Source: Auanema rhodensis (lineage: Eukaryota; Animalia; Nematoda). Taken from it: DNA of 64,000 nucleotides. Under the pieces are notes generated by a model that was given only the letters and a program-made list of their open reading frames with translations, ran no database searches and was not told where the DNA came from. This document shows, piece by piece, positions 1 through 16,435 of the stretch. Each line of letters starts with the position of its first letter. The stretch's first letter is position 1. The DNA is taken from assembly GCA_964057225.1 (NCBI GenBank), contig OZ059897.1:9858001-9922000 (forward strand). Reading direction: 5' to 3'. Made by a program: the position numbers and the translations under genes.

Positions 1-1148
1 GATAAACACCACTTTGGAAAACTTCTTGACCGATAACGCTACAGTGAGGATGTACAGCAGCTTCCAAATATGAATTCAATAGCCATTGGTTGGAAGGACC
101 TTCAGGCAACATATCAATTATTATAAGCAAGTATAATCAAATTACCAGCTTGGAATAAAAGTTCACGCCCTCCACTTCCACTAGCTTCTAAATTTATGAA
201 AGCTCGAATGGAATGTCTCCAGTGATGTTTAGTAATAAACCCATGAGCTGCCTAATGTTTTAAAATATACTTATAATATGCTATCTTGATCTCACCAGCA
301 AGCTAGATTCCTCAGCTCCGTTAAATAAAAATATTACATCATGCTTAAGATTTTGTGGTTGAGTAGATAAAAGACGGATGAGCTCTAGCATTAAGGCGCA
401 ACTTATAAGGTCATCAGACCCACCTGGATGAATAGAGTTTAAACAACAATACTAATAAGCATCAATAACCGCTTCCAGTTGGCCAGCTATCATAATGACA
501 ATTCAAGAGAACAGCTAACTGATTATCAGCTCCTTGCGCACCTAATCTAGCAATGACATTTGATACCTAAACATTAGGCATTTCGAAATTAAGCTACAGC
601 GTCACACACATTTTTATAGCAAATGGAAAAACCATCAGTATCGAACTTCGGAACATCAAAACAGCCGGAAGGATTTTGAGTTTCAATCTCGAAGCGTACA
701 TCAGATGAAGCATGACTTTGAATTGTTCTAAAATAAGATTAAACAAGGATATTTGAATGATGGGTATACTTGAGCTCAGAGTAAATTCTGTTTCTAGTTT
801 GATATTCACATGCATACGATCCTGCTGGTTTAGGCCCAAACTCTGAGAGCTCCTTTAAGATTTTTTTGGCCCTTATCTCAGAAAAATGAGAATTATCTAG
901 AAAATTAAATGAAATTTAATTAAAAGGGCACGCGTACCATAAGAAGGTGCTTTAGGGGACGGCAGGCAAACGTGTAAGTGAGTTGATAAAACAAGTAAAA
1001 CAAAGATAAAAATATATATTAAGATCCAATCAGAACGTATAAGAAGCTTATTGCTATCATGTTTTGCTTCTACCGGTTGATTGACTGTATCTTCTTGGGG
1101 GAGCAAGTGCCCAGATCGAGCACCTCGTCGTCGTACTTCAGACGACAT
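1..1148 (-). CDS. Endoplasmic reticulum metallopeptidase 1-like (M28 family, ERMP1/FXNA); 5' part only, runs off the left edge; multi-exon
   Basis: Starts MSSEVRRRG..., followed by a TM segment. Spliced exons give [45 protein letters not shown] and [20 protein letters not shown], the M28/ERMP1 signature motifs. Confidence 0.92.
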
Positions 1149-1586: not shown

Positions 1587-4500
1587 TTAGGATTGTATTT
1601 CAGACAAAGGTTGACGATGGCTGAAATGTGATAAAATACAGAATGCTAAGAAAACATAAAAACATACTGATTAGCTCTGCAATTCTTGGCTTCAGCTTCT
1701 AATTCTTTGAGATATTTTATTCCTTGTATTTTTTGCTAAACTTACTTTTTTAAGAATGAAAATTTAGTGCTTAACAAACCTTATTTAATTTCTTAACCTC
1801 AGCAATTAAATTTTCAACTTCGTTATTCTTTTTCTTCAGAATATCTTCCTATGAAACAAACAAATAATATAAAGTTGCATACACCAATTAAAAAATACCA
1901 ATCTTGTCACTGTAGAAATTATTTTCTCTTTCTCAGAACGAACATTTGCAAGAGAATTAGTCTAAAACTTTTTTTAATTTACTTTAAACGGTTTAGAGCT
2001 TACCAAATCCTGTACCAGTGCTGTTAATTTTTTATTTTCCAAAATAGCATTCTTGTCTTTGCAGGATCGAACTGAACTGAAATAAGAACAACAAATGTTA
2101 TAACATCAAGCAGTATACAGTACCTTTCAAGCTCATTGCCTCTTCGTATAGCACGCTGTGAAATTCTTTTCTCCTCTTCTAATTCATGAGCTTTAATTTT
2201 CAGACAACCCTGAGTATCTGTTAATTGTTCTTCCAAGGAGTGAATCAATAGTTTCATTTTAGAAATCTAAGTTTTAAAAAAATGAGAATAACTATCAACT
2301 ATATAAAACGTACCTTTTCTTCATATTTTCCAAATTCGTTCTCACGAATACTTTCTATTTCTTTCGTGGCTTTAGTATAATCCTGCGATAATAGTTTGAA
2401 ATCAACTTCCAATTTGTTTTTAGCAAAAGAAATACTAGAGATCTTCTCTTGCATGTTCGCAGCTTCAAAATTTAACTGATGTATACGATTATTCAAGCGC
2501 TCTTTATCGGCTAGAGCATTTTTCAAGTCCTAATAAATATAAAAATATTACAAAAAAGAAAAAAATATTTCCTACAGTTTTAACATTACATAATTCAGCT
2601 AGTTCTTCCCGAAGCGAGGAATATTTTAATTCTATCTCATGCTTAGCCAAGTGGAGCTTATGAAGATCTTTGTCTTTAGCGATAACAATATCTGTTTTCT
2701 TTCGTAGATCAATGTTAAATGTAGACAGAGAACGTTCGTAACCTTCGAGCTAAAACAGAAGCACATAAAATTCTGAAGAAGCTTACTTACTTTTTTATTC
2801 AAATTGAAATTGATAGCATCGCGTTCCGCCAACGAATCTTGCAGAATTATAATTTGCGACTTCAATTTGTCAATTTCTTCTCGATCTACAATTAGTTGGT
2901 CATCGGGAATGGTTGGAGCAATTGATTTATCATTCTAAAACAAAAAATTAAATTCTAATATTAAATATTAGTTCTCAAAACCTCAAGAAGTACAGTATTC
3001 AAAGCTTCTAAATCAGATACTTTTTTCTGGTACTGTTTAATAGTTTCATTGGCATGATCAAGGGAAGACTGTACGCTAATTTGTTTTTGTTTCATTTCCT
3101 CGATTCTATCTGCCTATAAGAAAAGAAAGTAAATCTAAATATTATTTCTTCTCACATGTAGCTTATCGGATTCCTGTTTCTGTATCTCCAATTGTTCTTT
3201 CAGATACAAAACTTCTTGGCTAAGAGGATCATCAGAATTATGAATAGAGTTTAGAAGTGTCTGAAATACATTATACACACGCACAAAGTTTAGAGAGGAT
3301 TACTTTTGCCTTTTCTAACTCTTCCCTTTCAGTCTTTAGAAGTTCGTTGTAACTATCTTTCAGATTTACAAGCGATGACTCGTATTCCTTCTGAATAAAT
3401 TATTCATATTAATACGTAATTACTATAATTCCCAACTCTTTCTTTATTATGCTCCTCTTCCACATAAGAGCAGCGTCTTTGCAGACTTTCCAACTGTTCA
3501 GTTATTCTTTCCACATTATCAACAGCATCATTTCTTTCACACTAAAGTAGAACAGCTTGTACATATAGTATAAAAAATATAAAGATCATTTATACCGTTA
3601 GAACAGTAACAGTTTTCTTCATTTCTTGAATGGTTGTTGCCAATTCTTCTCCTCTCAGGCGCATACGTTCTCGTTCAGACGTACTTTCTAAATCCTCTAT
3701 GATCTTTTGCTAAATCAAGAATTGTATAAAGGTCGGAATATAAATATTACTTCTAAATCTAAGTTTTGCTTCATCAAACTTTTATTTTTAGATTCTAATT
3801 CTTGAAGTTTGTTTCGCAGATGCCCCTAAAACAAACTACATACTTTTGTATTCTATGCACAAATCACATTTTCCTCCATGAGACGATCTTGACGCTCATG
3901 GTTTAAGTCAATCTGTTCTGCTGCAGATTGAAGCTTTAGAAGGAGCTCTTTAACTTCTTGAGTCTCCTGCAAAGCAGCATCACAAGTTTCACTTATTGCC
4001 TCGATTTGTTTATCCTAAACGTTAACATGTTATAATGTTAAGAGAATAACTAAACCTCTTCAACAATCTTCTTCTCAAGGCTGATTTCCTTAGAGCATAC
4101 GGATGTGTTCGAAAAGTCAGACATTCTGTTTGTATTAGAGATATTAATATTTTCAAATGGCTGAAAACAGAATGTAAATAAATCATAAAACAAAATACTA
4201 AACTTCAATTTTTTCTTCACTTTCCTCCGATAGTCTATCGAAAGATAAATTTCTATTTTCCATCTTAGCCAAAAATTCAGAAAATTTGTCCTGAATGAAA
4301 ATTGAATCAGCATAATTACTTGTGTACATACTGATTCGTCCTGTTCGGGAATTTGGGCGAAGCCTGTTCGAAAGATTTTCGATGGAGGAGAGGAAACACT
4401 TAGTTTACCATTTCCAGGAGCCCAAGTCATCCGCCTATTATTAACGCGCTTCATCTAAAAATTATGAAATAATAAAGGTTTCTCAATAACCAGAACCTGA

Positions 4501-6074
4501 GGAGCAGCATTATCCTTCTCATTAATAATACTTTTCATCAAAGACTTCAACCTCTCTCTTTCATCTTCTAGGTTATCATTAGTTTGAGTTTCCACTTTTT
4601 GCTGAAAGAATTTTACAGTTAACAGAATTAATCTGATCTAATCTCTTACATTTTCTAGTTGCTGCTTAAGAGCCTCAATTTCTGCTAAATACTTTCCTAG
4701 TACTCCATCTTCGGTGCCAACATTAATGGTTGGTCTAGATTTAACTAGTTTTACTTGTCGAGCAAACTGTGAACAATATTTTAGGCTTAGTTATACCATA
4801 AATCGTAATACCTTCAAAGTTGAACATGTTTCCGATGCAAACCGAGGATTAACACAGCAAACAACCAACGTTTTACTGTTACCTCCTAAACAAGGTTTCA
4901 AAATTCTAGTAAGCTTAGAGTCTCTATAGGGAACATGACCAGCGCAACGTTTTTTGTCAGACAGAATTGAGATAACTTTAGTGAGTGCTAGTAGAGATTT
5001 ATTAATATTGCCACCTTCCTAAATAAAAATTATAAGCAAATATCTCGATATGCTTAACATGCTTTTTGACGAGCACTTAGTCCAGCAGTAGCATCCCCAT
5101 TTTCACTACCAGCTAAATCTACCATATTAATTATGGAGGAGCGAGATTTGAAGCTTCCTTTAAAAAAATTAAAATTTAATTAGAAATATTTGAAACTAGA
5201 CCCTACCAATCCCGTCATTAGATTCTAAGCAAATTCTTAAAATCGCATGGGATCTACTAGATCTCTCATTCAATGCAGTTTCGCCTACTTGACGATTTTC
5301 TAAAGATTTCTTGTTGAAAACTTAAAAATAAATTTTTTAAATTCAACCTGCAGCACAAAATAGTAGATCTTCCACTTCTTCCCTACATGTAATGACTTGC
5401 TCAGTTAAACCTGGGACAAAAGGAATGTCGCCTTTTTCCTAAAAATTTAAGCATACCATTCAAACGTATATATTAACATACTTGAATAAGTAAATCTTCA
5501 CTATTGCTTAAAAGATCTCGAACTTTTTCGTTATATATTTCGAGGTAGGAGACTCGAATAAGATACTTTTTCTTATCCTGAAAAGGGGCAACATTTATCT
5601 CGTTGGGTAAAAAAATATCTAACTAAAGAGATCCTCGAGAATAAATCATTGAAGAGAAGATGAACAAGACCAAATGAATTACTTCCTGTTAGTGTATGTG
5701 TTTTACCTGAGAAAAAATTGTATGCTCGCAGAATAATATCGTTTACCTGCCCCACTCTGACCGTAAGCGCAAATTGCCACGTTATAACCATTCATCGACT
5801 CGTCCACAAGGTTTTTAATTGAGTTTTCATAAATATCTTCATTAGAAGATTCAGAAGAGTATATAGTATCTTAAAAAAGGAATTGCTCCGATTTCATATC
5901 TTATGCCTCACCAAAAGCATGTCTTTCATTTGTTCCTACTCTACATATTGAATTGTCTTCTATTTTCCATTCCAATTCTCCACCACTTTAAAAAAAAACT
6001 TGAATAGTTAGGTTTTTCCGCTCTCATAAATACCATGGTTTTATTCGCAACGCTACCATAATTGACTCCTCCAT
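1587..6074 (-). CDS. N-terminal motor kinesin with long coiled-coil tail, CENP-E/kinesin-7-like (~29 introns, roughly 1,050 aa by manual splicing)
   Basis: Starts [14 protein letters not shown]-loop [27 protein letters not shown], switch I NERSSRSH, switch [34 protein letters not shown] and CLGGNSKT are present. The post-motor motif RRMTWAPG lies at ~4415-4438. Heptad-rich exons follow, and the C-terminus is ...RQPLSEIQS*. Confidence 0.9.
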
Positions 6075-6466: not shown

Positions 6467-7796
6467 TTAGTTAATTCCCAAATAATTCTTAGAGATCTGA
6501 ATTGCTTCTTCCAAAGAACATTCCTTCATGCGAGCAGCATTCTCTCTTATTTCGTTGTAGAGGAGAGTAGACCTGCAAATAATCTTTCTATCAGAATATC
6601 AGTAAAGTAATAAATTACAAATATCGTTCTCCGAAACTGTTAATTGTTGTAACAATAAGTTTTCCTTTATTTTCAGGGCGTCCAGCGAGCTTAAATCAAA
6701 TTTAATTATAAGGAGATTGGAGGCAAATATACCTGGAGAGCAGCGCAAACATTAGCTCCTGAAGAAATGCCACCTAAAATTCCTTCTTCTTTGGCTAATC
6801 TACGAGCCATTTCAATAGCATCATTAGAGTGAACACGGAGAGCTTCAGAATAGAGAGTAGTGTCCAAATTTCCGGGAATCACACCAATTCCCATTCCTAT
6901 ATCCGTTGGTTTTGTGAGTCATAAATATGTTCCAAACCTTGGATTTTATGAGGATTGTGGGAGAATCCGTTGATAACAGAGGACTCGAATGGTTCTACTG
7001 GATATACTCCAATATTGGGATTCTTCTCCTTTAAGAATCGTCCTACACCACTGAGAGTTCCACCGGAACCTACTCCGAAGCAAACAAGATCAACCTGAAT
7101 TTTTTCATAACCTTCTGAATTAAAACAGTACCCACTTTTCCCTCAGTCTGCTTCCAGATTTCTGGTCCAGTTGACTTGTAGTGTGCAGCTGGGTTGGCTG
7201 GATTGGCGAATTGGTCAAGAACATAAGCATTGGGGATAGCAGCCTTCAATTCAGCAACTCTGTCCAAGGCTCCTTTAACCATCAAAGCAGGATCAGTAAG
7301 AACAACTTCTGCGCCATAAGCTTTCAACAAGCAACGTCTTTCTACACTCATGGAAGCTGGCATAACCAAAATACATTTGTATCTTTAAAATAGTCTATAG
7401 TTTTTAGTTGTCACTTAAGTAACTACCCCTTGAGAGAAGAGACGTAGGCTAAAGCAATTCCCATATTACCACTAGTTGCTTCAATCAGAACTGTTTTTCC
7501 AGGAGTGATCTACATTTTAACACGTTCAAAACGGAACTATTGAAACTAATAAATAACCTTTCCTTCTTTCTCAGCTGTCTCAATCATATTGTAAGCAATT
7601 CTGTCCTTAACGGAAGCAGCAGGATTGGTGTATTCAAGTTTCACAGCTAGAAGATACGGTCAATTGCGAAAAGTAAAAATGATTTACCAATTTTGGCTTC
7701 TAATCCTTTTGGAATATTGTTCAAAAGAAGAAGAGGAGTTTGTCCAATAACTTCACTGCCATCACGGGCCATAAACTCAGAACGATGTTGACTCAT
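6467..7796 (-). CDS. cysl-2: Cysteine synthase-like / beta-cyanoalanine synthase (PLP-dependent)
   Basis: [47 protein letters not shown] (PLP lysine), [48 protein letters not shown] and [13 protein letters not shown]. Best match from memory is C. elegans CYSL-2; paralogue identity is less certain. Confidence 0.88.
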
Positions 7797-7952
7797 TTTG
7801 AATCTATAATAGAAAGTAATTACCTAGTTCAAAAAGTAATGATTTTGTAAGAATCAGCAGCCTCGCCCTAAATGACACGAAAATAAAGAAAAAAACAGGA
7901 ACTGAAAAAATCAGACAGTTTACTTATCTACATATGGAACGAGACCGTGAAT

Positions 7953-8774: not shown

Positions 8775-11702
8775 ATGCAAGAGGTTTAAATCTTTGCGCA
8801 ATTTGTTTAATATTAAAAAATAGGTTCAGGTGGCTTCAAGGCCTGCTGAATCTACTAGAGTAACAACCAAATCAAGTACAAATAACAGTTCACGAAGGAA
8901 AACAGCCCTTAGCAGTGAAGATGGTTATTTCAATTATTTAATATGTCCTTATTTTGTATTTTGTATTCAAGCTCTTAATCGCACAGAACAAGGATCAAAA
9001 ATATCAAAACTAGATGTTAATGCGGATAAAGTAGAACCTTCGTTTATTGATGATGAGGATAGTATTTCGGACGAATTAGAGGTGATTCGTAGTAGAGAGA
9101 ATCAAGACTACTTTAATAGGGTAGGTAAAATATTATTTTGATGCTGATTACGTTTTAATTACGTCTGGCAAGCTATTATTAATTTTGTAAAATTATAACA
9201 GTTCATTTATATAGCTATGCGTGGGAAAATTAACGCGCTTAGCTCGTCACCGATCACTATGGAATAATGAGTTCAACGCATATTTTGTGGTCCTGATATT
9301 TCTATTGACATTTGATGTTCTAGTCCAATTTTCTATGCATTTAAACAAATATGGAAGTGAGATTTATCTCCAAAACCTAACTTATTGCATTTTCTTTAGC
9401 TGCTTTCTTACCTGCATATACTATTTCAATGATTTTTGTTTCATTCCCATTATTATATTTGGAACTAGCCTTGGGCCAATACACATCTAGCACTTCGTAT
9501 CATATATTTGATCGAATGGCACCTGCATTTGCAGGTACTTTTAGAAAATCGTGTTTATAATGTTTAATTATATCATCGGTAGGCCTTGGCATTGCGTCTA
9601 TGGTGTTCAACTTCTTTAAAATTCTTTCGGAGACCGCTATGCTAAGAATTTTTCTGCAATTTTTATCGAAAGCTGCTAATTTCTTAGGCGCGGGATTGCC
9701 TTGGAATAGTTGTAATAACGATCATAACAGCGGAAGTACGGTTCAATAAAATCAATAAGAATAAATTAAATTTCAAATTTAGGGTGTTTTCACTCGAAAA
9801 ATCCATGTATGATGCTAAATTTCTCGCCATCACCTGATGAAGAGAAAGCGTCCTCATTCTTTTTAGGGTATGATAAAGAAATCATAGAATTTGCTGCAAA
9901 AGTGAAATAATTACAGAATAAAAAGAGATGTATGCTTTATTACCGATATTCCTGCCATGCATTCTCAAATGGAGCGAGGATTAGAAACTCAAGAAGGGAT
10001 TGATTGGATTCGGAATGAAGCTATGGGACAATTCATGTCTGTTGATCATTCTGTTCAATAGTTACATCAATTTAGGTTTTGGAATATCAATTTCGACAAA
10101 CTTACAGTACCATATTATCCATCTATTTCCTTTATAATTTTAACATTTGTATGTGTTTCCTTGCTTTATATAATTTCACAATCAAGCAACCGCATTATTA
10201 TGAGTGTAAGTATCGTAAGAATACACTCGATATTTCCTCATTATAGGTTGCTAAAGCAGGCATCATTGTTCTTGTTTCTGTTATCTTCATCCTTACTCTA
10301 CATTTTTTGTCTGCTGTAGAGATCCCACCTCAGATTCTTCGACCTGTTCATTTTTTCGATGTTTTAGACAGTCATATGTGGATATCTGCTGTTTTACTGG
10401 TAGATAACAGAATAAGTTTCAATTTAACAAGTAGTCGTTCAGAGTCTGTCAGCTTTAAAAGTGGGGCAAGGTGGTTTGTCTTATTTAGGAGCCCAAAATA
10501 AATTCAACCATAATTTGATGAGGTTTTTTAGGAGAATCTATAAGTTTTTAAACAAATTTTAAAATTTCAGAAATAGCTTTCTATACCTGATTATAATGAT
10601 TTTCATGCCTATGTTTTATGCTGTAATTCATCTCATGATAATTCATAATTCAACCTCCTATATCAATAGTAATTCAAAATTATAGTAATAATCTTTTTTT
10701 TATTTTTAGGAGACAAATTTGTCGATCATCCAACAATGAAGAGATACATTTCTCATCCTATTATTCAAATTTTATTCTTAATGCAAGGGATGAACTCTAC
10801 CAACGAGACCTACGGAATCTTTTTCTTCTGTATTATGGGTATTTTACTCGTACTTTGTAATTCGGTTAAATAAGTATTCAAAACTCTTTTAATACCTTAT
10901 GTTTAGCTGATTCGACTTGAAATACTTGTTTCATCAATGATAGAAGCTTTCCCCTTTTTCACATACGATGGCAGAAACAGTCGTAGTGCTGTAGTTTGTA
11001 TCATTTTGTGTTTTGTGTTCATGTATTCTTTCTTATTTGTCAGTTCGGTAGTTAGTACTTGTTATTTTTCTATTAATCTGTCGTTTTTCAGAATGGCTTT
11101 GCAATACAGTTAGCTTTAGATGATTTAGTTTATCCTGATATTGTCTTGGTTATAATCTTGTTCCAACTGCTTGCTGTTTGCTGTTGTTACGGCCCAAAAC
11201 GTCTTTTCACAAACATCAGTTGTATGATCCACAGCACAAAAATAGTGATTAATTTCAAAAAACGATATCAAACTTTATTTATAAACTTCAGGATGTCTTT
11301 TTTTCAAATATTTTCAACATGATAGTTGCTATTCTTTGGACTGTCGTAATTCCTGCTGTAGTCTTGGTAATACATGTTTTCTGAACTACAGTCAATTCAA
11401 ATTCAGTTTGTTCTTTATTCTCGAGTCAAGCAACAGTATGAATCGGATTATGCAAATATTCTGGAAGTACCATCATTAATAAGATTTGGAATTTTGTCTT
11501 TAATTCCTGTAATTATGTTCCAAAGGGTTGTTTTTCCGAAATTAACATTCTTACTTATAATTTGCAGCTCATGAACTATTATGCAGTTGGAAAAGATATT
11601 TTCGCCTTGTTCAAACCTCACCGAGAGCTTTGGGGCCCAAAATCAAAGAAAGACAGAGATCGCGTACACAAAAAGGAAAAAGAATTTCTCATTCAATATT
11701 AA
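8775..11702 (+). CDS. Divergent SLC6/SNF (sodium:neurotransmitter symporter family) membrane protein; multi-exon
   Basis: Spliced exons give RSLWNNEF...KYGTAFLPAY...PLLYLELALGQYT...FDRMAPAFAGLGIA...LPWNSCNNDHN...NKFNHNL...CYGPKRLF...LWGPK. This is the SLC6 motif order, with multiple TM helices. Confidence 0.8.
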
Positions 11703-11864
11703 CTCAAGGAGCATTTACTGTAATATTTTGCATTTAATACTGAACATTACTGTTTGAATGCCTTAAATCAGAGAGGGTAAATATATAATTATGCTATTTA
11801 TTCACAGGTCTATGATTTTTTGACAATATTGTCAATCTAGTATTAATGTTTTTCACATCTAGTT

Positions 11865-12573
11865 TCATTCAAATATATCAGGAGTTTCTTGTACTTCATC
11901 TATTTCATCACTCATTGATTCTTCTGCTGTTTCTAATTCTATATCATCCTCAGTCTCGGCTGTTTGATCGGCCGCACTTTCTATAGCGCTCTCTTCTAGT
12001 ATATCAGTTTCAGTCAGCTGAAAAATAATTTAAGCGCAAGCATACTATAATAACCAAACGTCATTTTCATTGTCTTCCCCGCCTAATTGAGAATCATCGG
12101 CATTTTGCTTAGTTCTAATTGTATAATCAGGCCAGCCATCAAGAGCATCTTCCAAAAATTCGAACATCCAGTTCGTTTTAATTACACGATCTGTAAAACT
12201 TTAGGATTTATAGAAGAAACCTATTGAAAGGAATACCAATATCTTTACGCTGAACAGTTTTTCTTCTTTCATTCGCCGCCTGCGTATAGCAAGCCTTTGC
12301 AAATTCTGCAATGAAGAGTTCCTAAAGAAACGTAAAGTCAGACTTTGCGAGTATAATAGACACCGTAGATTTTGTTACAAGCCTTACTGCATCGGAATTT
12401 AGCATGTGTACCTAAATTAAACTAAATAATCACACTTTGCCAGTTTTACTTACATCAGGATCTAATTTACATATTTTTTTAATTTTTGAAAGAGGTAGTT
12501 CACTATGCAATATCTGATCAATGCGGCTTTCTAATTCGTCCATTAATTGTGAGTCATCAATAATCACATCCAT
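11865..12573 (-). CDS. Histone-fold protein, POLE4/Dpb3 (CHRAC-related)-like, with acidic C-terminal tail; copy 1
   Basis: LPLSKIKKICKLDPDV-HMLNSDAVRLVTKST-ELFIAEFAKACYTQAANERRKTVQRKDI-DRVIKTNWMFEFLEDAL (H2A-like CBFD/NF-YC-type fold), followed by an E/D-rich tail. Confidence 0.85.
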
Positions 12574-12750
12574 CTTAATTATATAAATAAACTTATAATA
12601 TAATTTATAAACTTTTTTCTGAACACAATAAATGAGAAAAAATAATAAAAAGTAATAAATAAATAATTTCAAAAAATGCAAAATAACGTGTAAACTAGAA
12701 TAGAATATCGTTACCAGTCGATAAACTATAGAAATATTTTAAATGGTTGA

Positions 12751-12763
12751 TTTCGCGCCAAAA
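12751..12763. promoter_or_regulatory. E2F-like site TTTCGCGCCAAAA upstream of POLE4-like (duplicated at 16091-16103)
   Basis: Canonical TTTCGCGC core about 180 bp upstream of the ATG of a replication gene. Confidence 0.5.
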
Positions 12764-12978
12764 ACAAGTGACGGTCCAGTTGAATGATACAGCTAATTGA
12801 AAGCATGTTCTTGTAGTAATAAATAAAAAGAGATTGAAACATGTAAAATATCCGGAAGTAATGATGAATTTATATAGAGTGTATAAGAATTTTACTTCAG
12901 AATCAGTATTTTTATTAGCCCAATGCTATATTTTCCTTATTCACTTAATCTGGGACCTTTTCGACCTATTCCTTATTT

Positions 12979-15042
12979 ATGCTAAGAATTTTTCTGCAAT
13001 TTTTATCGAAAGCTGCTAATTTCTTAGGCGCGGGATTGCCTTGGAATAGTTGTAATAACGATCATAACAGCGGAAGTACGGTTCAATAAAATCAATAAGA
13101 ATAAATTAAATTTCAAATTTAGGGTGTTTTCACTCGAAAAATCCATGTATGATGCTAAATTTCTCGCCATCACCTGATGAAGAGAAAGCGTCCTCATTCT
13201 TTTTAGGGTATGATAAAGAAATCATAGAATTTGCTGCAAAAGTGAAATAATTACAGAATAAAAAGAGATGTATGCTTTATTACCGATATTCCTGCCATGC
13301 ATTCTCAAATGGAGCGAGGATTAGAAACTCAAGAAGGGATTGATTGGATTCGGAATGAAGCTATGGGACAATTCATGTCTGTTGATCATTCTGTTCAATA
13401 GTTACATCAATTTAGGTTTTGGAATATCAATTTCGACAAACTTACAGTACCATATTATCCATCTATTTCCTTTATAATTTTAACATTTGTATGTGTTTCC
13501 TTGCTTTATATAATTTCACAATCAAGCAACCGCATTATTATGAGTGTAAGTATCGTAAGAATACACTCGATATTTCCTCATTATAGGTTGCTAAAGCAGG
13601 CATCATTGTTCTTGTTTCTGTTATCTTCATCCTTACTCTACATTTTTTGTCTGCTGTAGAGATCCCACCTCAGATTCTTCGACCTGTTCATTTTTTCGAT
13701 GTTTTAGACAGTCATATGTGGATATCTGCTGTTTTACTGGTAGATAACAGAATAAGTTTCAATTTAACAAGTAGTCGTTCAGAGTCTGTCAGCTTTAAAA
13801 GTGGGGCAAGGTGGTTTGTCTTATTTAGGAGCCCAAAATAAATTCAACCATAATTTGATGAGGTTTTTTAGGAGAATCTATAAGTTTTTAAACAAATTTT
13901 AAAATTTCAGAAATAGCTTTCTATACCTGATTATAATGATTTTCATGCCTATGTTTTATGCTGTAATTCATCTCATGATAATTCATAATTCAACCTCCTA
14001 TATCAATAGTAATTCAAAATTATAGTAATAATCTTTTTTTTATTTTTAGGAGACAAATTTGTCGATCATCCAACAATGAAGAGATACATTTCTCATCCTA
14101 TTATTCAAATTTTATTCTTAATGCAAGGGATGAACTCTACCAACGAGACCTACGGAATCTTTTTCTTCTGTATTATGGGTATTTTACTCGTACTTTGTAA
14201 TTCGGTTAAATAAGTATTCAAAACTCTTTTAATACCTTATGTTTAGCTGATTCGACTTGAAATACTTGTTTCATCAATGATAGAAGCTTTCCCCTTTTTC
14301 ACATACGATGGCAGAAACAGTCGTAGTGCTGTAGTTTGTATCATTTTGTGTTTTGTGTTCATGTATTCTTTCTTATTTGTCAGTTCGGTAGTTAGTACTT
14401 GTTATTTTTCTATTAATCTGTCGTTTTTCAGAATGGCTTTGCAATACAGTTAGCTTTAGATGATTTAGTTTATCCTGATATTGTCTTGGTTATAATCTTG
14501 TTCCAACTGCTTGCTGTTTGCTGTTGTTACGGCCCAAAACGTCTTTTCACAAACATCAGTTGTATGATCCACAGCACAAAAATAGTGATTAATTTCAAAA
14601 AACGATATCAAACTTTATTTATAAACTTCAGGATGTCTTTTTTTCAAATATTTTCAACATGATAGTTGCTATTCTTTGGACTGTCGTAATTCCTGCTGTA
14701 GTCTTGGTAATACATGTTTTCTGAACTACAGTCAATTCAAATTCAGTTTGTTCTTTATTCTCGAGTCAAGCAACAGTATGAATCGGATTATGCAAATATT
14801 CTGGAAGTACCATCATTAATAAGATTTGGAATTTTGTCTTTAATTCCTGTAATTATGTTCCAAAGGGTTGTTTTTCCGAAATTAACATTCTTACTTATAA
14901 TTTGCAGCTCATGAACTATTATGCAGTTGGAAAAGATATTTTCGCCTTGTTCAAACCTCACCGAGAGCTTTGGGGCCCAAAATCAAAGAAAGACAGAGAT
15001 CGCGTACACAAAAAGGAAAAAGAATTTCTCATTCAATATTAA
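12979..15042 (+). pseudogene. 5'-truncated duplicate of the SLC6-like gene; starts at an internal in-frame Met (MLRIFLQF...)
   Basis: Second copy of 9639-11702. It lacks the N-terminus and the first TM segments. Confidence 0.7.
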
Positions 15043-15204
15043 CTCAAGGAGCATTTACTGTAATATTTTGCATTTAATACTGAACATTACTGTTTGAATG
15101 CCTTAAATCAGAGAGGGTAAATATATAATTATGCTATTTATTCACAGGTCTATGATTTTTTGACAATATTGTCAATCTAGTATTAATGTTTTTCACATCT
15201 AGTT

Positions 15205-15913
15205 TCATTCAAATATATCAGGAGTTTCTTGTACTTCATCTATTTCATCACTCATTGATTCTTCTGCTGTTTCTAATTCTATATCATCCTCAGTCTCGGC
15301 TGTTTGATCGGCCGCACTTTCTATAGCGCTCTCTTCTAGTATATCAGTTTCAGTCAGCTGAAAAATAATTTAAGCGCAAGCATACTATAATAACCAAACG
15401 TCATTTTCATTGTCTTCCCCGCCTAATTGAGAATCATCGGCATTTTGCTTAGTTCTAATTGTATAATCAGGCCAGCCATCAAGAGCATCTTCCAAAAATT
15501 CGAACATCCAGTTCGTTTTAATTACACGATCTGTAAAACTTTAGGATTTATAGAAGAAACCTATTGAAAGGAATACCAATATCTTTACGCTGAACAGTTT
15601 TTCTTCTTTCATTCGCCGCCTGCGTATAGCAAGCCTTTGCAAATTCTGCAATGAAGAGTTCCTAAAGAAACGTAAAGTCAGACTTTGCGAGTATAATAGA
15701 CACCGTAGATTTTGTTACAAGCCTTACTGCATCGGAATTTAGCATGTGTACCTAAATTAAACTAAATAATCACACTTTGCCAGTTTTACTTACATCAGGA
15801 TCTAATTTACATATTTTTTTAATTTTTGAAAGAGGTAGTTCACTATGCAATATCTGATCAATGCGGCTTTCTAATTCGTCCATTAATTGTGAGTCATCAA
15901 TAATCACATCCAT
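15205..15913 (-). CDS. POLE4-like histone-fold protein; copy 2 (identical duplicate, with its upstream region)
   Basis: Exact copy of 11865-12573 shifted by 3,340 bp. Confidence 0.8.
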
Positions 15914-16435
15914 CTTAATTATATAAATAAACTTATAATATAATTTATAAACTTTTTTCTGAACACAATAAATGAGAAAAAATAATAAAAAGTAATAAAT
16001 AAATAATTTCAAAAAATGCAAAATAACGTGTAAACTAGAATAGAATATCGTTACCAGTCGATAAACTATAGAAATATTTTAAATGGTTGATTTCGCGCCA
16101 AAAACAAGTGACGGTCCAGTTGAATGATACAGCTAATTGAAAGCATGTTCTTGTAGTAATAAATAAAAAGAGATTGAAACATGTAAAATATCCGGAAGTA
16201 ATGATGAATTTATATAGAGTGTATAAGAATTTTACTTCAGAATCAGTATTTTTATTAGCCCAATGCTATATTTTCCTTATTCACTTAATCTGGGACCTTT
16301 TCGACCTATTCCTTATTTACAATCGGAAACGCCGACGAATGAGCTTGACTTAGTGAACAAATCAAGCGAGTAAAGTTTAAGTTCATGCGACACGGCAGAC
16401 TACTTTTACTTTGGTAAGCGCTTGTGGCTGGTAAC

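What the first reader, a model, noticed from the sequence alone, without database searches (positions are those of the whole stretch)
1587..6074. Compact CENP-E (kinesin-7)-like motor in a nematode, a family C. elegans lacks
Seen: an intact N-terminal kinesin motor, the motif [13 protein letters not shown] just after the neck, a long coiled coil, and roughly 1,050 aa in total. Established: vertebrate CENP-E has KRRVTW at the same position (Aurora site / PP1-docking RVxW), is ~2,700 aa and ends in CAAX; holocentric C. elegans has no CENP-E. Inference: this lineage keeps a shortened CENP-E with no CAAX. That would imply chromosome congression or segregation mechanics different from the C. elegans model. 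This is the best candidate for an undescribed system in the window.
Basis: partly seen in the sequence, partly recalled or inferred. Interest (0 to 1): 0.8.

Follow-up and report, generated by a model that had tools for sequence, protein, structure and literature searches.

The report
Compact nematode CENP-E kinesin, CAAX lost
This is a real, expressed gene for a short version of the chromosome-moving motor CENP-E in a nematode close to Auanema, but such nematode CENP-E genes were described in 2024, so only its missing lipid-anchor tail is new.

Summary
On the minus strand, 6074..1587, lies a 30-exon gene for a 1062-aa protein. Spliced RNA contigs from four runs of one study account for all 29 introns. 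The protein has an intact N-terminal kinesin motor, a neck, the motif [13 protein letters not shown] (residues 377-389) and about 570 residues of coiled coil.

It is a CENP-E (kinesin-7) orthologue.
- The motor falls in the kinesin-7 clade (UFBoot 100 / SH-aLRT 99).
- Grouping it with kinesin-8 is rejected (AU p=0.017).
- The RRxTW motif sits where it does in Xenopus and mouse CENP-E. It occurs in 146 of 205 kinesin-7-side proteins and in 0 of 35 kinesin-2/-4/-8 proteins.
- Synteny makes the gene the positional orthologue of an Auanema sp. JU1783 gene.
- Compact (745-1198 aa) orthologues in strongylids, Ascaris and filariae keep CENP-E's C-terminal ECxxQ farnesylation box.

It is not an undescribed system. 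PMC11827601 (2024) mapped CENP-E across nematodes, with loss in Caenorhabditis, and knocked it out in Pristionchus pacificus without mitotic defects. The lineage-specific CAAX loss, and the four-fold stalk shortening shared by these nematode orthologues, are modest new details. The scan had not noted this gene before.

The parts
1587..6074 (-). Coding region of the CENP-E orthologue: 30 exons, 1062 aa. The transcript reaches about 6113 (5') and about 1507 (3').
   Evidence: Hand-built model. All junctions are accounted for by spliced RNA contigs of four runs.
4812..6062 (-). Kinesin motor domain, residues 5-301 (exons 1-9). It holds the P-loop (5762-5699, across an intron), switch I (5270-5247), switch II (5119-5102) and the microtubule-binding [13 protein letters not shown] (4937-4899).
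   Evidence: Pfam PF00225 on the exons, motifs, 80% identity to the Auanema sp. JU1783 motor.
5019..5062 (-). Intron 8 with a GC-AG boundary.
   Evidence: The donor reads GCATGT. The mRNA contig length between pieces 5742-5869 and 4812-5017 fits only this junction.
4650..4766 (-). Neck linker (KSRPTINV, 4742-4719) and neck coil ([18 protein letters not shown], 4703-4650), residues 302-340.
   Evidence: Aligns with LLKRYRxEIxDLxKQLE of Xenopus and mouse CENP-E.
4413..4451 (-). [13 protein letters not shown], residues 377-389. The core RRMTW is 4436-4422, with T385 as the candidate Aurora-type phospho-site.
   Evidence: An RRxTW motif lies 42-84 residues after the motor in the rows printed. It is found in 146/205 kinesin-7-side proteins and 0/35 others. 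Alignment.
4056..4412 (-). Ser/Pro/Asn-rich linker outside the coiled coil, residues 390-480.
   Evidence: Low heptad score and Pro present. Only the SPPxK patch is conserved among nematodes.
2982..4014 (-). Coiled-coil stalk, first part, residues 481-735.
   Evidence: Heptad score 0.60-0.72 in the 50-residue rows from residue 501, with almost no Pro or Gly.
2896..2934 (-). Proline-containing break ([13 protein letters not shown]), a probable hinge, residues 736-748.
1679..2895 (-). Coiled-coil stalk, second part, residues 749-1048. It includes the clade-V conserved motif [13 protein letters not shown] (1735-1697).
   Evidence: Heptad score. The motif K..G[ILV].[YF]..EL is shared with Auanema, strongylids and Heterorhabditis.
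1587..1678 (-). Short C-terminal end (residues 1049-1062, ...[12 protein letters not shown]) and the stop codon. No CAAX box.
   Evidence: The same end (PLGEIQKS) occurs in Auanema sp. JU1783.

Best explanation
The gene encodes the orthologue of CENP-E (kinesin-7, KIF10) in a rhabditid nematode close to Auanema. Shown: an expressed, intact gene with a catalytically complete N-terminal kinesin-7 motor, a CENP-E-type neck, the conserved RRxTW motif after the neck, and a coiled-coil stalk of about 570 residues. Inferred: it works as a plus-end-directed dimeric motor. Its stalk would be about 85 nm long (568 residues x 0.1485 nm), against about 230 nm in vertebrates. Its activity would be switched by a basophilic Aurora-type kinase at T385 in RRMTW, as at T422 of human CENP-E. 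Its tail would bind a cargo, presumably the outer kinetochore or corona. Unlike almost all other CENP-Es, including those of strongylid, ascarid and filarial nematodes, it has lost the last ~85 residues with the ECxxQ farnesylation box. Any cargo or kinetochore targeting must therefore work without prenylation. By analogy with P. pacificus, the mitotic role is probably accessory rather than essential.
For: The gene model and its expression are confirmed by RNA contigs. Motor motifs are intact. In the careful IQ-TREE motor tree the kinesin-7 clade including the nematode proteins has UFBoot 100 / SH-aLRT 99, the nematode clade 98/91, and window + Auanema + strongylids 100/97. The AU test rejects nematodes + kinesin-8 (p=0.017) and does not reject nematodes + metazoan CENP-E (p=0.124). 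With the orthologue's motor, PDB phmmer ranks CENP-E first: 191.7 bits against 183.5 for kinesin-8. The RRxTW motif sits at the same place as in Xenopus O42263 (KRKRRVTWAPGK) and mouse, in 146/205 kinesin-7-side rows and 0/35 others. Human KRKRRVTWCLGK can be read in Table S5 of PMC11827601. Nematode orthologues end in ECKQQ, ECIQQ or ECKTQ, like vertebrate ECKTQ/ECKTS and fungal QCAQQ. Synteny with Auanema sp. JU1783 is colinear: DSPc, histone-fold, SNF, PALP, kinesin, ERMP1. Published work reports nematode CENP-E (PMC11827601) and reviews T422, PP1 and farnesylation (PMC7475649).
Against: The motor of the window and Auanema proteins is derived. Family HMMs score it about equally for holozoan CENP-E (314.8) and kinesin-8 (315.4), with 332.1 for another kinesin-7 group. 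In the tree the nematode clade sits at the base of kinesin-7 on a long branch, not inside metazoan CENP-E. My outgroups covered only kinesin-2, -4 and -8. The other families were excluded only by being absent from the 60 rows shown, the lowest of which scores 155.9 bits. The tail shows no specific match to the CENP-E kinetochore-binding region, only generic coiled-coil hits. CAAX is absent. Met replaces the Val/Ile of the PP1 RVxF motif. Kinetochore localisation, dimerisation, motility and phosphorylation are untested.
Confidence: 0.78

Rival explanations
1. It descends from CENP-E but is no longer a kinetochore motor. After losing the farnesylated C-terminus, the protein was kept for another job, for example in the germline or spermatogenesis, or as a spindle-microtubule motor.
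For: The CAAX box and the last ~85 residues are lost in both this genome and Auanema sp. JU1783. The tail evolves fast: 47% identity over the whole protein against 80% in the motor, while neighbouring genes reach 70-97% in tblastx pieces. P. pacificus cenp-E mutants have normal mitosis but variable brood size, and the authors suggest a sperm-oocyte-switch role.
Against: Nothing here shows loss of kinetochore binding. The RRxTW site and the neck are retained. A conserved motif near the C-terminus is shared with the CAAX-bearing strongylid proteins.
Confidence: 0.15
2. It is a kinesin-8 (KIF18/KLP-13-like) or another non-kinesin-7 mitotic kinesin that acquired an RRxTW-like motif by convergence.
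For: With exon 9 alone, KIF7 and KIF18A outrank CENP-E in PDB. The kinesin-8 HMM scores the window motor as high as the holozoan CENP-E HMM.
Against: Kinesin-7 clade support is 100/99 and the AU test rejects kinesin-8 (p=0.017). The motif is absent from all 35 kinesin-2/-4/-8 rows. The close orthologues carry the CENP-E CAAX end. For Ascaris, Brugia and Haemonchus, the CENP-E HMM beats the best of the kinesin-2/-4/-8 HMMs by 54-89 bits.
Confidence: 0.03
3. It is a decaying gene on its way to loss, as happened in Caenorhabditis, and is transcribed but without function.
For: The family was lost three times in nematodes. Here the C-terminus is truncated and the motor is derived.
Against: The 1062-codon frame is open across 30 exons and all catalytic motifs are intact. 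The transcript is correctly spliced in four runs. The same architecture and the same C-terminal end are kept in a relative with only 47% identity.
Confidence: 0.04

Closest known systems
Ppa-cenp-E (PPA38637) of Pristionchus pacificus and the nematode CENP-E orthologues of PMC11827601
   Same: A CENP-E orthologue kept in a holocentric rhabditid nematode while Caenorhabditis lost it. The paper's species set (Haemonchus, Brugia, Parascaris, Diploscapter, Pristionchus) overlaps the genera of the orthologues found here.
   Different: A different species. I could not fetch the P. pacificus sequence, so its length and C-terminus were not compared. The paper does not mention protein length, coiled coil or farnesylation.
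Auanema sp. JU1783 CAI4231725.1 (unnamed protein product, 1028 aa)
   Same: Positional orthologue with colinear neighbours. Same architecture, same [12 protein letters not shown] motif and same CAAX-less end.
   Different: Only 47% identical overall (80% in the motor). Its deposited gene model skips part of a motor exon.
Strongylid, ascarid and filarial CENP-E orthologues (e.g. Haemonchus contortus 1174 aa; Ascaris suum F1KTE8 1037 aa; Brugia pahangi 747 aa)
   Same: Compact size, kinesin-7 motor, RRQTW motif. Strongylids and Heterorhabditis also share a conserved motif in the C-terminal part of the stalk.
   Different: They keep the C-terminal PEC(K/I/T)xQ farnesylation box, which lies about 80 residues beyond the point where the window protein ends.
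Vertebrate CENP-E / KIF10 (Xenopus laevis O42263, 2954 aa; mouse, human)
   Same: N-terminal kinesin-7 motor, neck LLKRYxxEIxxLKxQLE, RRxTW site (T422 in human) about 40-60 residues after the motor, and a discontinuous coiled-coil stalk.
   Different: The stalk is about four times shorter. There is no CAAX. Met replaces Val in the RVxF PP1-docking position. No recognisable kinetochore-binding domain or second microtubule-binding site was found.
Kinesin-8 (KIF18A, Kip3, KLP-13)
   Same: An N-terminal mitotic motor with similar switch II to alpha-6 sequence. The motor HMM score is nearly equal.
   Different: It forms a separate clade (100/99), and union with the nematode proteins is rejected (p=0.017). 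It has no RRxTW motif.

Membership tests
Kinesin superfamily, N-type | N-terminal motor domain with P-loop, switch I, switch II and a neck linker after the motor | tested here: met
   PF00225 matches on colinear exons. [35 protein letters not shown] and KSRPTINV are present.
Kinesin-7 | The motor domain groups with kinesin-7 in a phylogeny against other families | tested here: met
   Careful IQ-TREE of 66 motors: the kinesin-7 clade of 46 rows, including the window, has 100/99 support. The AU test rejects union with kinesin-8, p=0.017. Outgroups were limited to kinesin-2, -4 and -8. The other families do not appear among the 60 best PDB rows.
CENP-E subfamily of kinesin-7 | The motor nests within the metazoan CENP-E clade | tested here: inconclusive
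   The nematode clade is a long branch at the base of kinesin-7. The tree with nematodes + metazoan CENP-E is not rejected, p-AU 0.124. For the window motor, HMM scores are similar across the kinesin-7 groups.
CENP-E subfamily of kinesin-7 | A conserved RRxTW(A/C/F)PG site shortly after the neck (Aurora site T422 in human) | tested here: met
   [12 protein letters not shown] lies 42 residues after the motor. The motif is found in 146/205 kinesin-7-side rows (animals, fungi, Capsaspora, Salpingoeca) and 0/35 others, and is absent from plant KIN-7.
CENP-E subfamily of kinesin-7 | A PP1-docking RVxF motif ([RK]-x0-1-[VI]-{P}-[FW]) overlapping that site | tested here: not met
   The window has R-M-T-W. 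Most invertebrate and fungal CENP-Es have R-Q/E-T-W. Among the sequences printed, only the vertebrates have R-V-T-W. On this sample the strict motif looks vertebrate-specific rather than family-defining.
CENP-E subfamily of kinesin-7 | A C-terminal CAAX farnesylation box ([EQ]CxxQ) | tested here: not met
   The protein ends ...PLSEIQS, and there is no CAAX exon downstream in the window or in the JU1783 locus. The box is present in 124 of 151 motif-bearing proteins, including strongylid, Ascaris, filarial and Heterorhabditis orthologues. I read this as a derived loss in an orthologue, not as a sign of another family.
CENP-E subfamily of kinesin-7 | A long discontinuous coiled-coil stalk | tested here: met
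   The heptad score is 0.66 against 0.43 +/- 0.02 for shuffles, with a proline break at residues 736-748. The stalk has only about 570 residues, against 2000 or more in non-nematode CENP-E.
CENP-E subfamily of kinesin-7 | [quoted passage not shown] | tested here: inconclusive
   hhalign of the nematode tails against metazoan CENP-E tails gives six equally scoring generic coiled-coil matches.
CENP-E subfamily of kinesin-7 | Localisation to the outer kinetochore or corona, and plus-end-directed motility | not testable with these tools
   This needs tagging or immunofluorescence and motility assays.
Nematode CENP-E orthologue group | Full-length similarity and positional orthology with annotated nematode members | tested here: met
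   The model aligns over residues 1-1058 with JU1783 P0002 and over most of its length with Cylicocyclus and Haemonchus proteins. Six genes are in colinear synteny.
Kinesin-8 | The motor groups with KIF18/Kip3 | tested here: not met
   Separate clades. The union is rejected, p=0.017.

The most novel reading that the evidence does not exclude
The nematode orthologues found here (strongylids, Heterorhabditis, Auanema, Ascaris, filariae) carry a natural 'mini-CENP-E'. The stalk is cut from about 2000 to about 350-800 residues, while both regulatory ends (RRxTW and the farnesylated ECxxQ) are kept. The Auanema lineage went one step further and dropped the farnesylated end. That could be an intermediate stage of the pathway decay that ended in complete loss in Caenorhabditis. 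Or it could mark a re-targeting of the motor, conceivably linked to the unusual meiotic X-chromosome segregation of Auanema.
Probability: 0.3. Interest if true: 0.45.

Novelty: new member of a known kind. Interest (0 to 1): 0.25.

Why it matters
This is an ordinary orthologue of a well-known motor, in a phylum where its presence, its repeated loss and its dispensability have already been published. Two details may interest kinetochore researchers. First, nematode CENP-Es are two to four times shorter than all others yet keep the post-neck phospho-site, and mostly the farnesylation box. They therefore define a naturally minimised CENP-E that could guide truncation studies. Second, this lineage has lost the prenylated end, which gives a natural test of what farnesylation contributes.

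Tried and rejected
- Exon 9 alone against PDB could not name the family: KIF7, KIF18A and KIF4 ranked above CENP-E.
- Looking up cluster names for ten unlabelled tree rows gave almost no names. I labelled the kinesin-4-like clade by a PDB search instead. That query range was badly chosen and covered only the end of the motor, but KIF4 was still the top hit.
- Family HMM scoring did not separate kinesin-7 from kinesin-8 for the window motor. It did so clearly for the Ascaris, Brugia and Haemonchus orthologues.
- Profile-profile comparison of the tails with CENP-E tails gave only unspecific coiled-coil matches.
- Alternative splice choices were rejected by mRNA length bookkeeping: an exon 7 acceptor 21 nt upstream, and a GT donor 4 nt downstream for intron 8.
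- I searched for a hidden CAAX-encoding 3' exon in the window and in the JU1783 locus and found none.
- The spliced protein has no reference, so it could not be handed to the protein-search or structure tools. Those steps used single exons or the JU1783 orthologue instead.
- No structure prediction was run.
Full report
**What is in the sequence**

Three-frame translation of the minus strand between 6400 and 1300 shows a chain of short open pieces. They join through GT-AG introns of 40-55 nt.

Four public runs from one study hold spliced contigs of 2979-3308 nt that lie on this model. Fifteen joints are listed and fourteen more are not shown. The record coordinates of the listed pieces account for the summed length of every exon in between. 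This bookkeeping did three things:
- It settled the exon 7 acceptor at 5299.
- It showed that intron 8 (5062-5019) has a GC-AG boundary.
- It corrected exon 23 to 2749..2576, which adds three codons.

The protein therefore has 1062 residues. The contigs carry about 39 nt of 5' UTR and about 80 nt of 3' UTR. The gene is expressed and correctly spliced.

**Anatomy**

- Pfam Kinesin (PF00225) matches exons 3, 4, 5, 7, 8 and 9 in colinear order over profile positions 48-319 of 327.
- The P-loop GQSGAGKT, switch I NERSSRSH, switch II DLAGSE and the microtubule-binding [13 protein letters not shown] are intact. A neck linker (KSRPTINV) and a neck coil follow the motor.
- [13 protein letters not shown] is residues 377-389.
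- Residues 390-480 are Ser/Pro/Asn-rich.
- The tail has strong heptad periodicity: over residues 471-1050 the score is 0.66 against 0.43 +/- 0.02 in shuffles. Proline and glycine are almost absent, and there is one proline-containing break at residues 736-748.
- The protein ends ...[12 protein letters not shown].

**Relatives**

The spliced protein has no reference, so I searched with the 69-residue exon 9 (collected). The second-best hit, P0002, is a 1028-aa unnamed protein of Auanema sp. JU1783 (CAI4231725.1). It aligns with my model from residue 1 to 1058 at 47% identity, and at 80% over the motor.

The JU1783 contig is colinear with the window over six genes: a DSPc phosphatase, a histone-fold gene, an SNF transporter, a PALP enzyme, the kinesin and an ERMP1-like peptidase. 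The two kinesin genes are therefore positional orthologues. This fits an earlier scan note (s1-407103) that called this genome Auanema-like.

A search with the first 420 residues of P0002 found full-length relatives in other nematodes:
- strongylids (Haemonchus, Nippostrongylus, Necator, Cooperia, Ancylostoma, Cylicocyclus, Heligmosomoides), 1079-1198 aa;
- Ascaris suum, 1037 aa, which UniProt names 'Centromere-associated protein E' (F1KTE8);
- filariae, 745-804 aa;
- Diploscapter and Heterorhabditis.

The best Caenorhabditis hits were KLP-11-type kinesin-2 at much lower scores.

**Which kinesin family**

- With the orthologue's motor, CENP-E is the best solved structure: 191.7 bits, then kinesin-8 at 183.5 and OSM-3 at 182.7. 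Kinesin-4, -5, -10 and -12 do not appear among the 60 rows shown.
- I fetched bona fide CENP-Es, including Xenopus laevis O42263, mouse, echinoderms, cnidarians, Capsaspora, Salpingoeca and chytrids.
- I built motor trees from these. In the careful IQ-TREE of 66 motors, kinesin-7 including the nematode proteins is one clade with UFBoot 100 / SH-aLRT 99. The nematode proteins form a clade (98/91). The window protein with its Auanema orthologue is sister to the strongylid proteins (100/97).
- Kinesin-2, kinesin-8 and a kinesin-4-like group (labelled through PDB) stay outside.
- An AU test rejects a union of the nematode proteins with kinesin-8 (p=0.017).

The weak point is position within kinesin-7. 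The nematode clade is a long branch at the base, not inside metazoan CENP-E, although that placement is not rejected (p=0.124). Clade-specific HMMs clearly favour CENP-E for the Ascaris, Brugia and Haemonchus proteins. For the more derived window motor they do not: 314.8 for holozoan CENP-E against 315.4 for kinesin-8.

**Evidence outside the motor**

This evidence decides the subfamily.

It occurs in 146 of 205 kinesin-7-side proteins and in none of the 35 kinesin-2/-4/-8 proteins. Plant KIN-7 lacks it. Examples:
- Xenopus CENP-E has KRKRRVTWAPGK.
- Mouse has KRKRRVTWCYGK.
- Human KRKRRVTWCLGK can be read in Table S5 of PMC11827601.
- The window has [12 protein letters not shown].

The neck in front of the motif aligns as well. 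This is the site whose threonine (T422 in human) is phosphorylated by Aurora A/B and which overlaps a PP1-docking RVxF motif (PMC7475649). The strict PP1 motif needs Val or Ile. The window has Met, and most invertebrate and fungal CENP-Es have Gln or Glu. So the conserved feature is the basophilic kinase site with its tryptophan, not PP1 docking.

Second, CENP-Es from fungi to vertebrates end in a CAAX box of the form [EQ]CxxQ. So do the strongylid (ECKQQ), Ascaris (ECIQQ), filarial (ECKTQ) and Heterorhabditis (ECKHQ) proteins. The compact nematode proteins thus share CENP-E's motor family, its post-neck site and, apart from the Auanema-lineage pair and a few possibly incomplete models, its farnesylated end. 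They are CENP-E orthologues with a stalk two to four times shorter.

The window protein and the Auanema sp. JU1783 protein both stop about 80 residues earlier, with a similar end (PLSEIQS / PLGEIQKS). No CAAX-type exon lies downstream in either genome. It is specific to this lineage rather than to nematodes.

**How it probably works**

Shown: an expressed gene for an intact N-type kinesin-7 motor with a neck coil, a conserved RRxTW site and a long heptad-repeat tail.

Inferred:
- It is a plus-end-directed homodimer with a stalk of roughly 85 nm (568 residues x 0.1485 nm), against about 230 nm in vertebrates.
- It is activated by Aurora-type phosphorylation of T385.
- It binds its cargo through the tail without prenylation.

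Whether the cargo is still the kinetochore cannot be told here. The tail gives only generic coiled-coil matches to CENP-E tails. A motif near the C-terminus (QKxxG[IL]xYxxEL) is shared with Auanema, the strongylids and Heterorhabditis, and may be part of a cargo site. This is speculation.

**Comparison with what is known, and novelty**

PMC11827601 (J Cell Sci 2024) profiled CENP-E in 12 nematode species with a CENP-E motor HMM and a 562-sequence tree. It inferred three losses (Caenorhabditis, Tylenchina, Trichinellida). It also showed that three frameshift alleles of Ppa-cenp-E (PPA38637) leave P. pacificus viable with normal mitosis and only a more variable brood size.

That removes the novelty of 'a CENP-E in a nematode'. 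It also argues against the inference that such a gene implies different segregation mechanics.

That paper does not mention length, coiled coil or farnesylation. No other paper in the library links CENP-E with Pristionchus, and none of the listed papers that mention both Auanema and kinetochores is about CENP-E. The shared shortening of the nematode orthologues and the CAAX loss in the Auanema lineage therefore look unreported, though they are modest points.

**Verdict**

This is a new member of a known kind, of low to moderate interest.

Noticed in passing
window 9633-16312: A tandem duplication with a 3340-bp unit and two copies 99.7% identical. It holds a histone-fold gene and part of an SNF-family transporter gene, which are single-copy in the syntenic Auanema sp. 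JU1783 contig. It is either a recent duplication or an assembly artefact.
   Followed up: partly
window 6467-7806 (-): A PALP (PF00291, cysteine-synthase-like) gene lies directly upstream of the kinesin on the same strand, about 390 nt from its ATG. The same pair lies 290 nt apart in Auanema sp. JU1783, so this may be an operon. The longest RNA contig ends at about 6113, next to an acceptor-like TTCCTTAG, which would fit trans-splicing. No leader sequence was seen.
   Followed up: no
window 5019-5062 (-): A GC-AG intron in the motor region, confirmed by the mRNA contigs.
   Followed up: yes
L001 10895-10996 (Auanema sp. JU1783, CAI4231725.1): The deposited gene model of the orthologue lacks about 30 motor residues around the DLAGSE switch II, although the exon is present in the DNA and matches window 5164-5063 at 82%. 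This is probably an annotation error in the public record.
   Followed up: partly
window 1-1055 (-): An ERMP1-like gene (Peptidase_M28 family, by synteny with L001 15024-18578) starts about 530 nt downstream of the kinesin stop and runs off the window.
   Followed up: no
P0001, P0278, P0283 (Acanthoscelides obtectus proteins): Bean-weevil proteins of 960-1110 aa match the kinesin motor query strongly. P0001 matches the 69-residue motor exon in six separate stretches. Their precomputed Pfam lists also carry PF00519 (P0001, P0278) and PF22374. They look like a repeated kinesin fragment fused to unrelated domains, perhaps captured by a mobile element, or mis-assembled gene models.
   Followed up: no
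window 1697-1735 (-), residues 1030-1042: A motif QKxxG[IL]xY[ILVM]xEL in the C-terminal part of the stalk is conserved between this protein, Auanema, strongylids and Heterorhabditis. My pattern search did not find it in non-nematode CENP-E. It may be a cargo-binding patch.
   Followed up: partly
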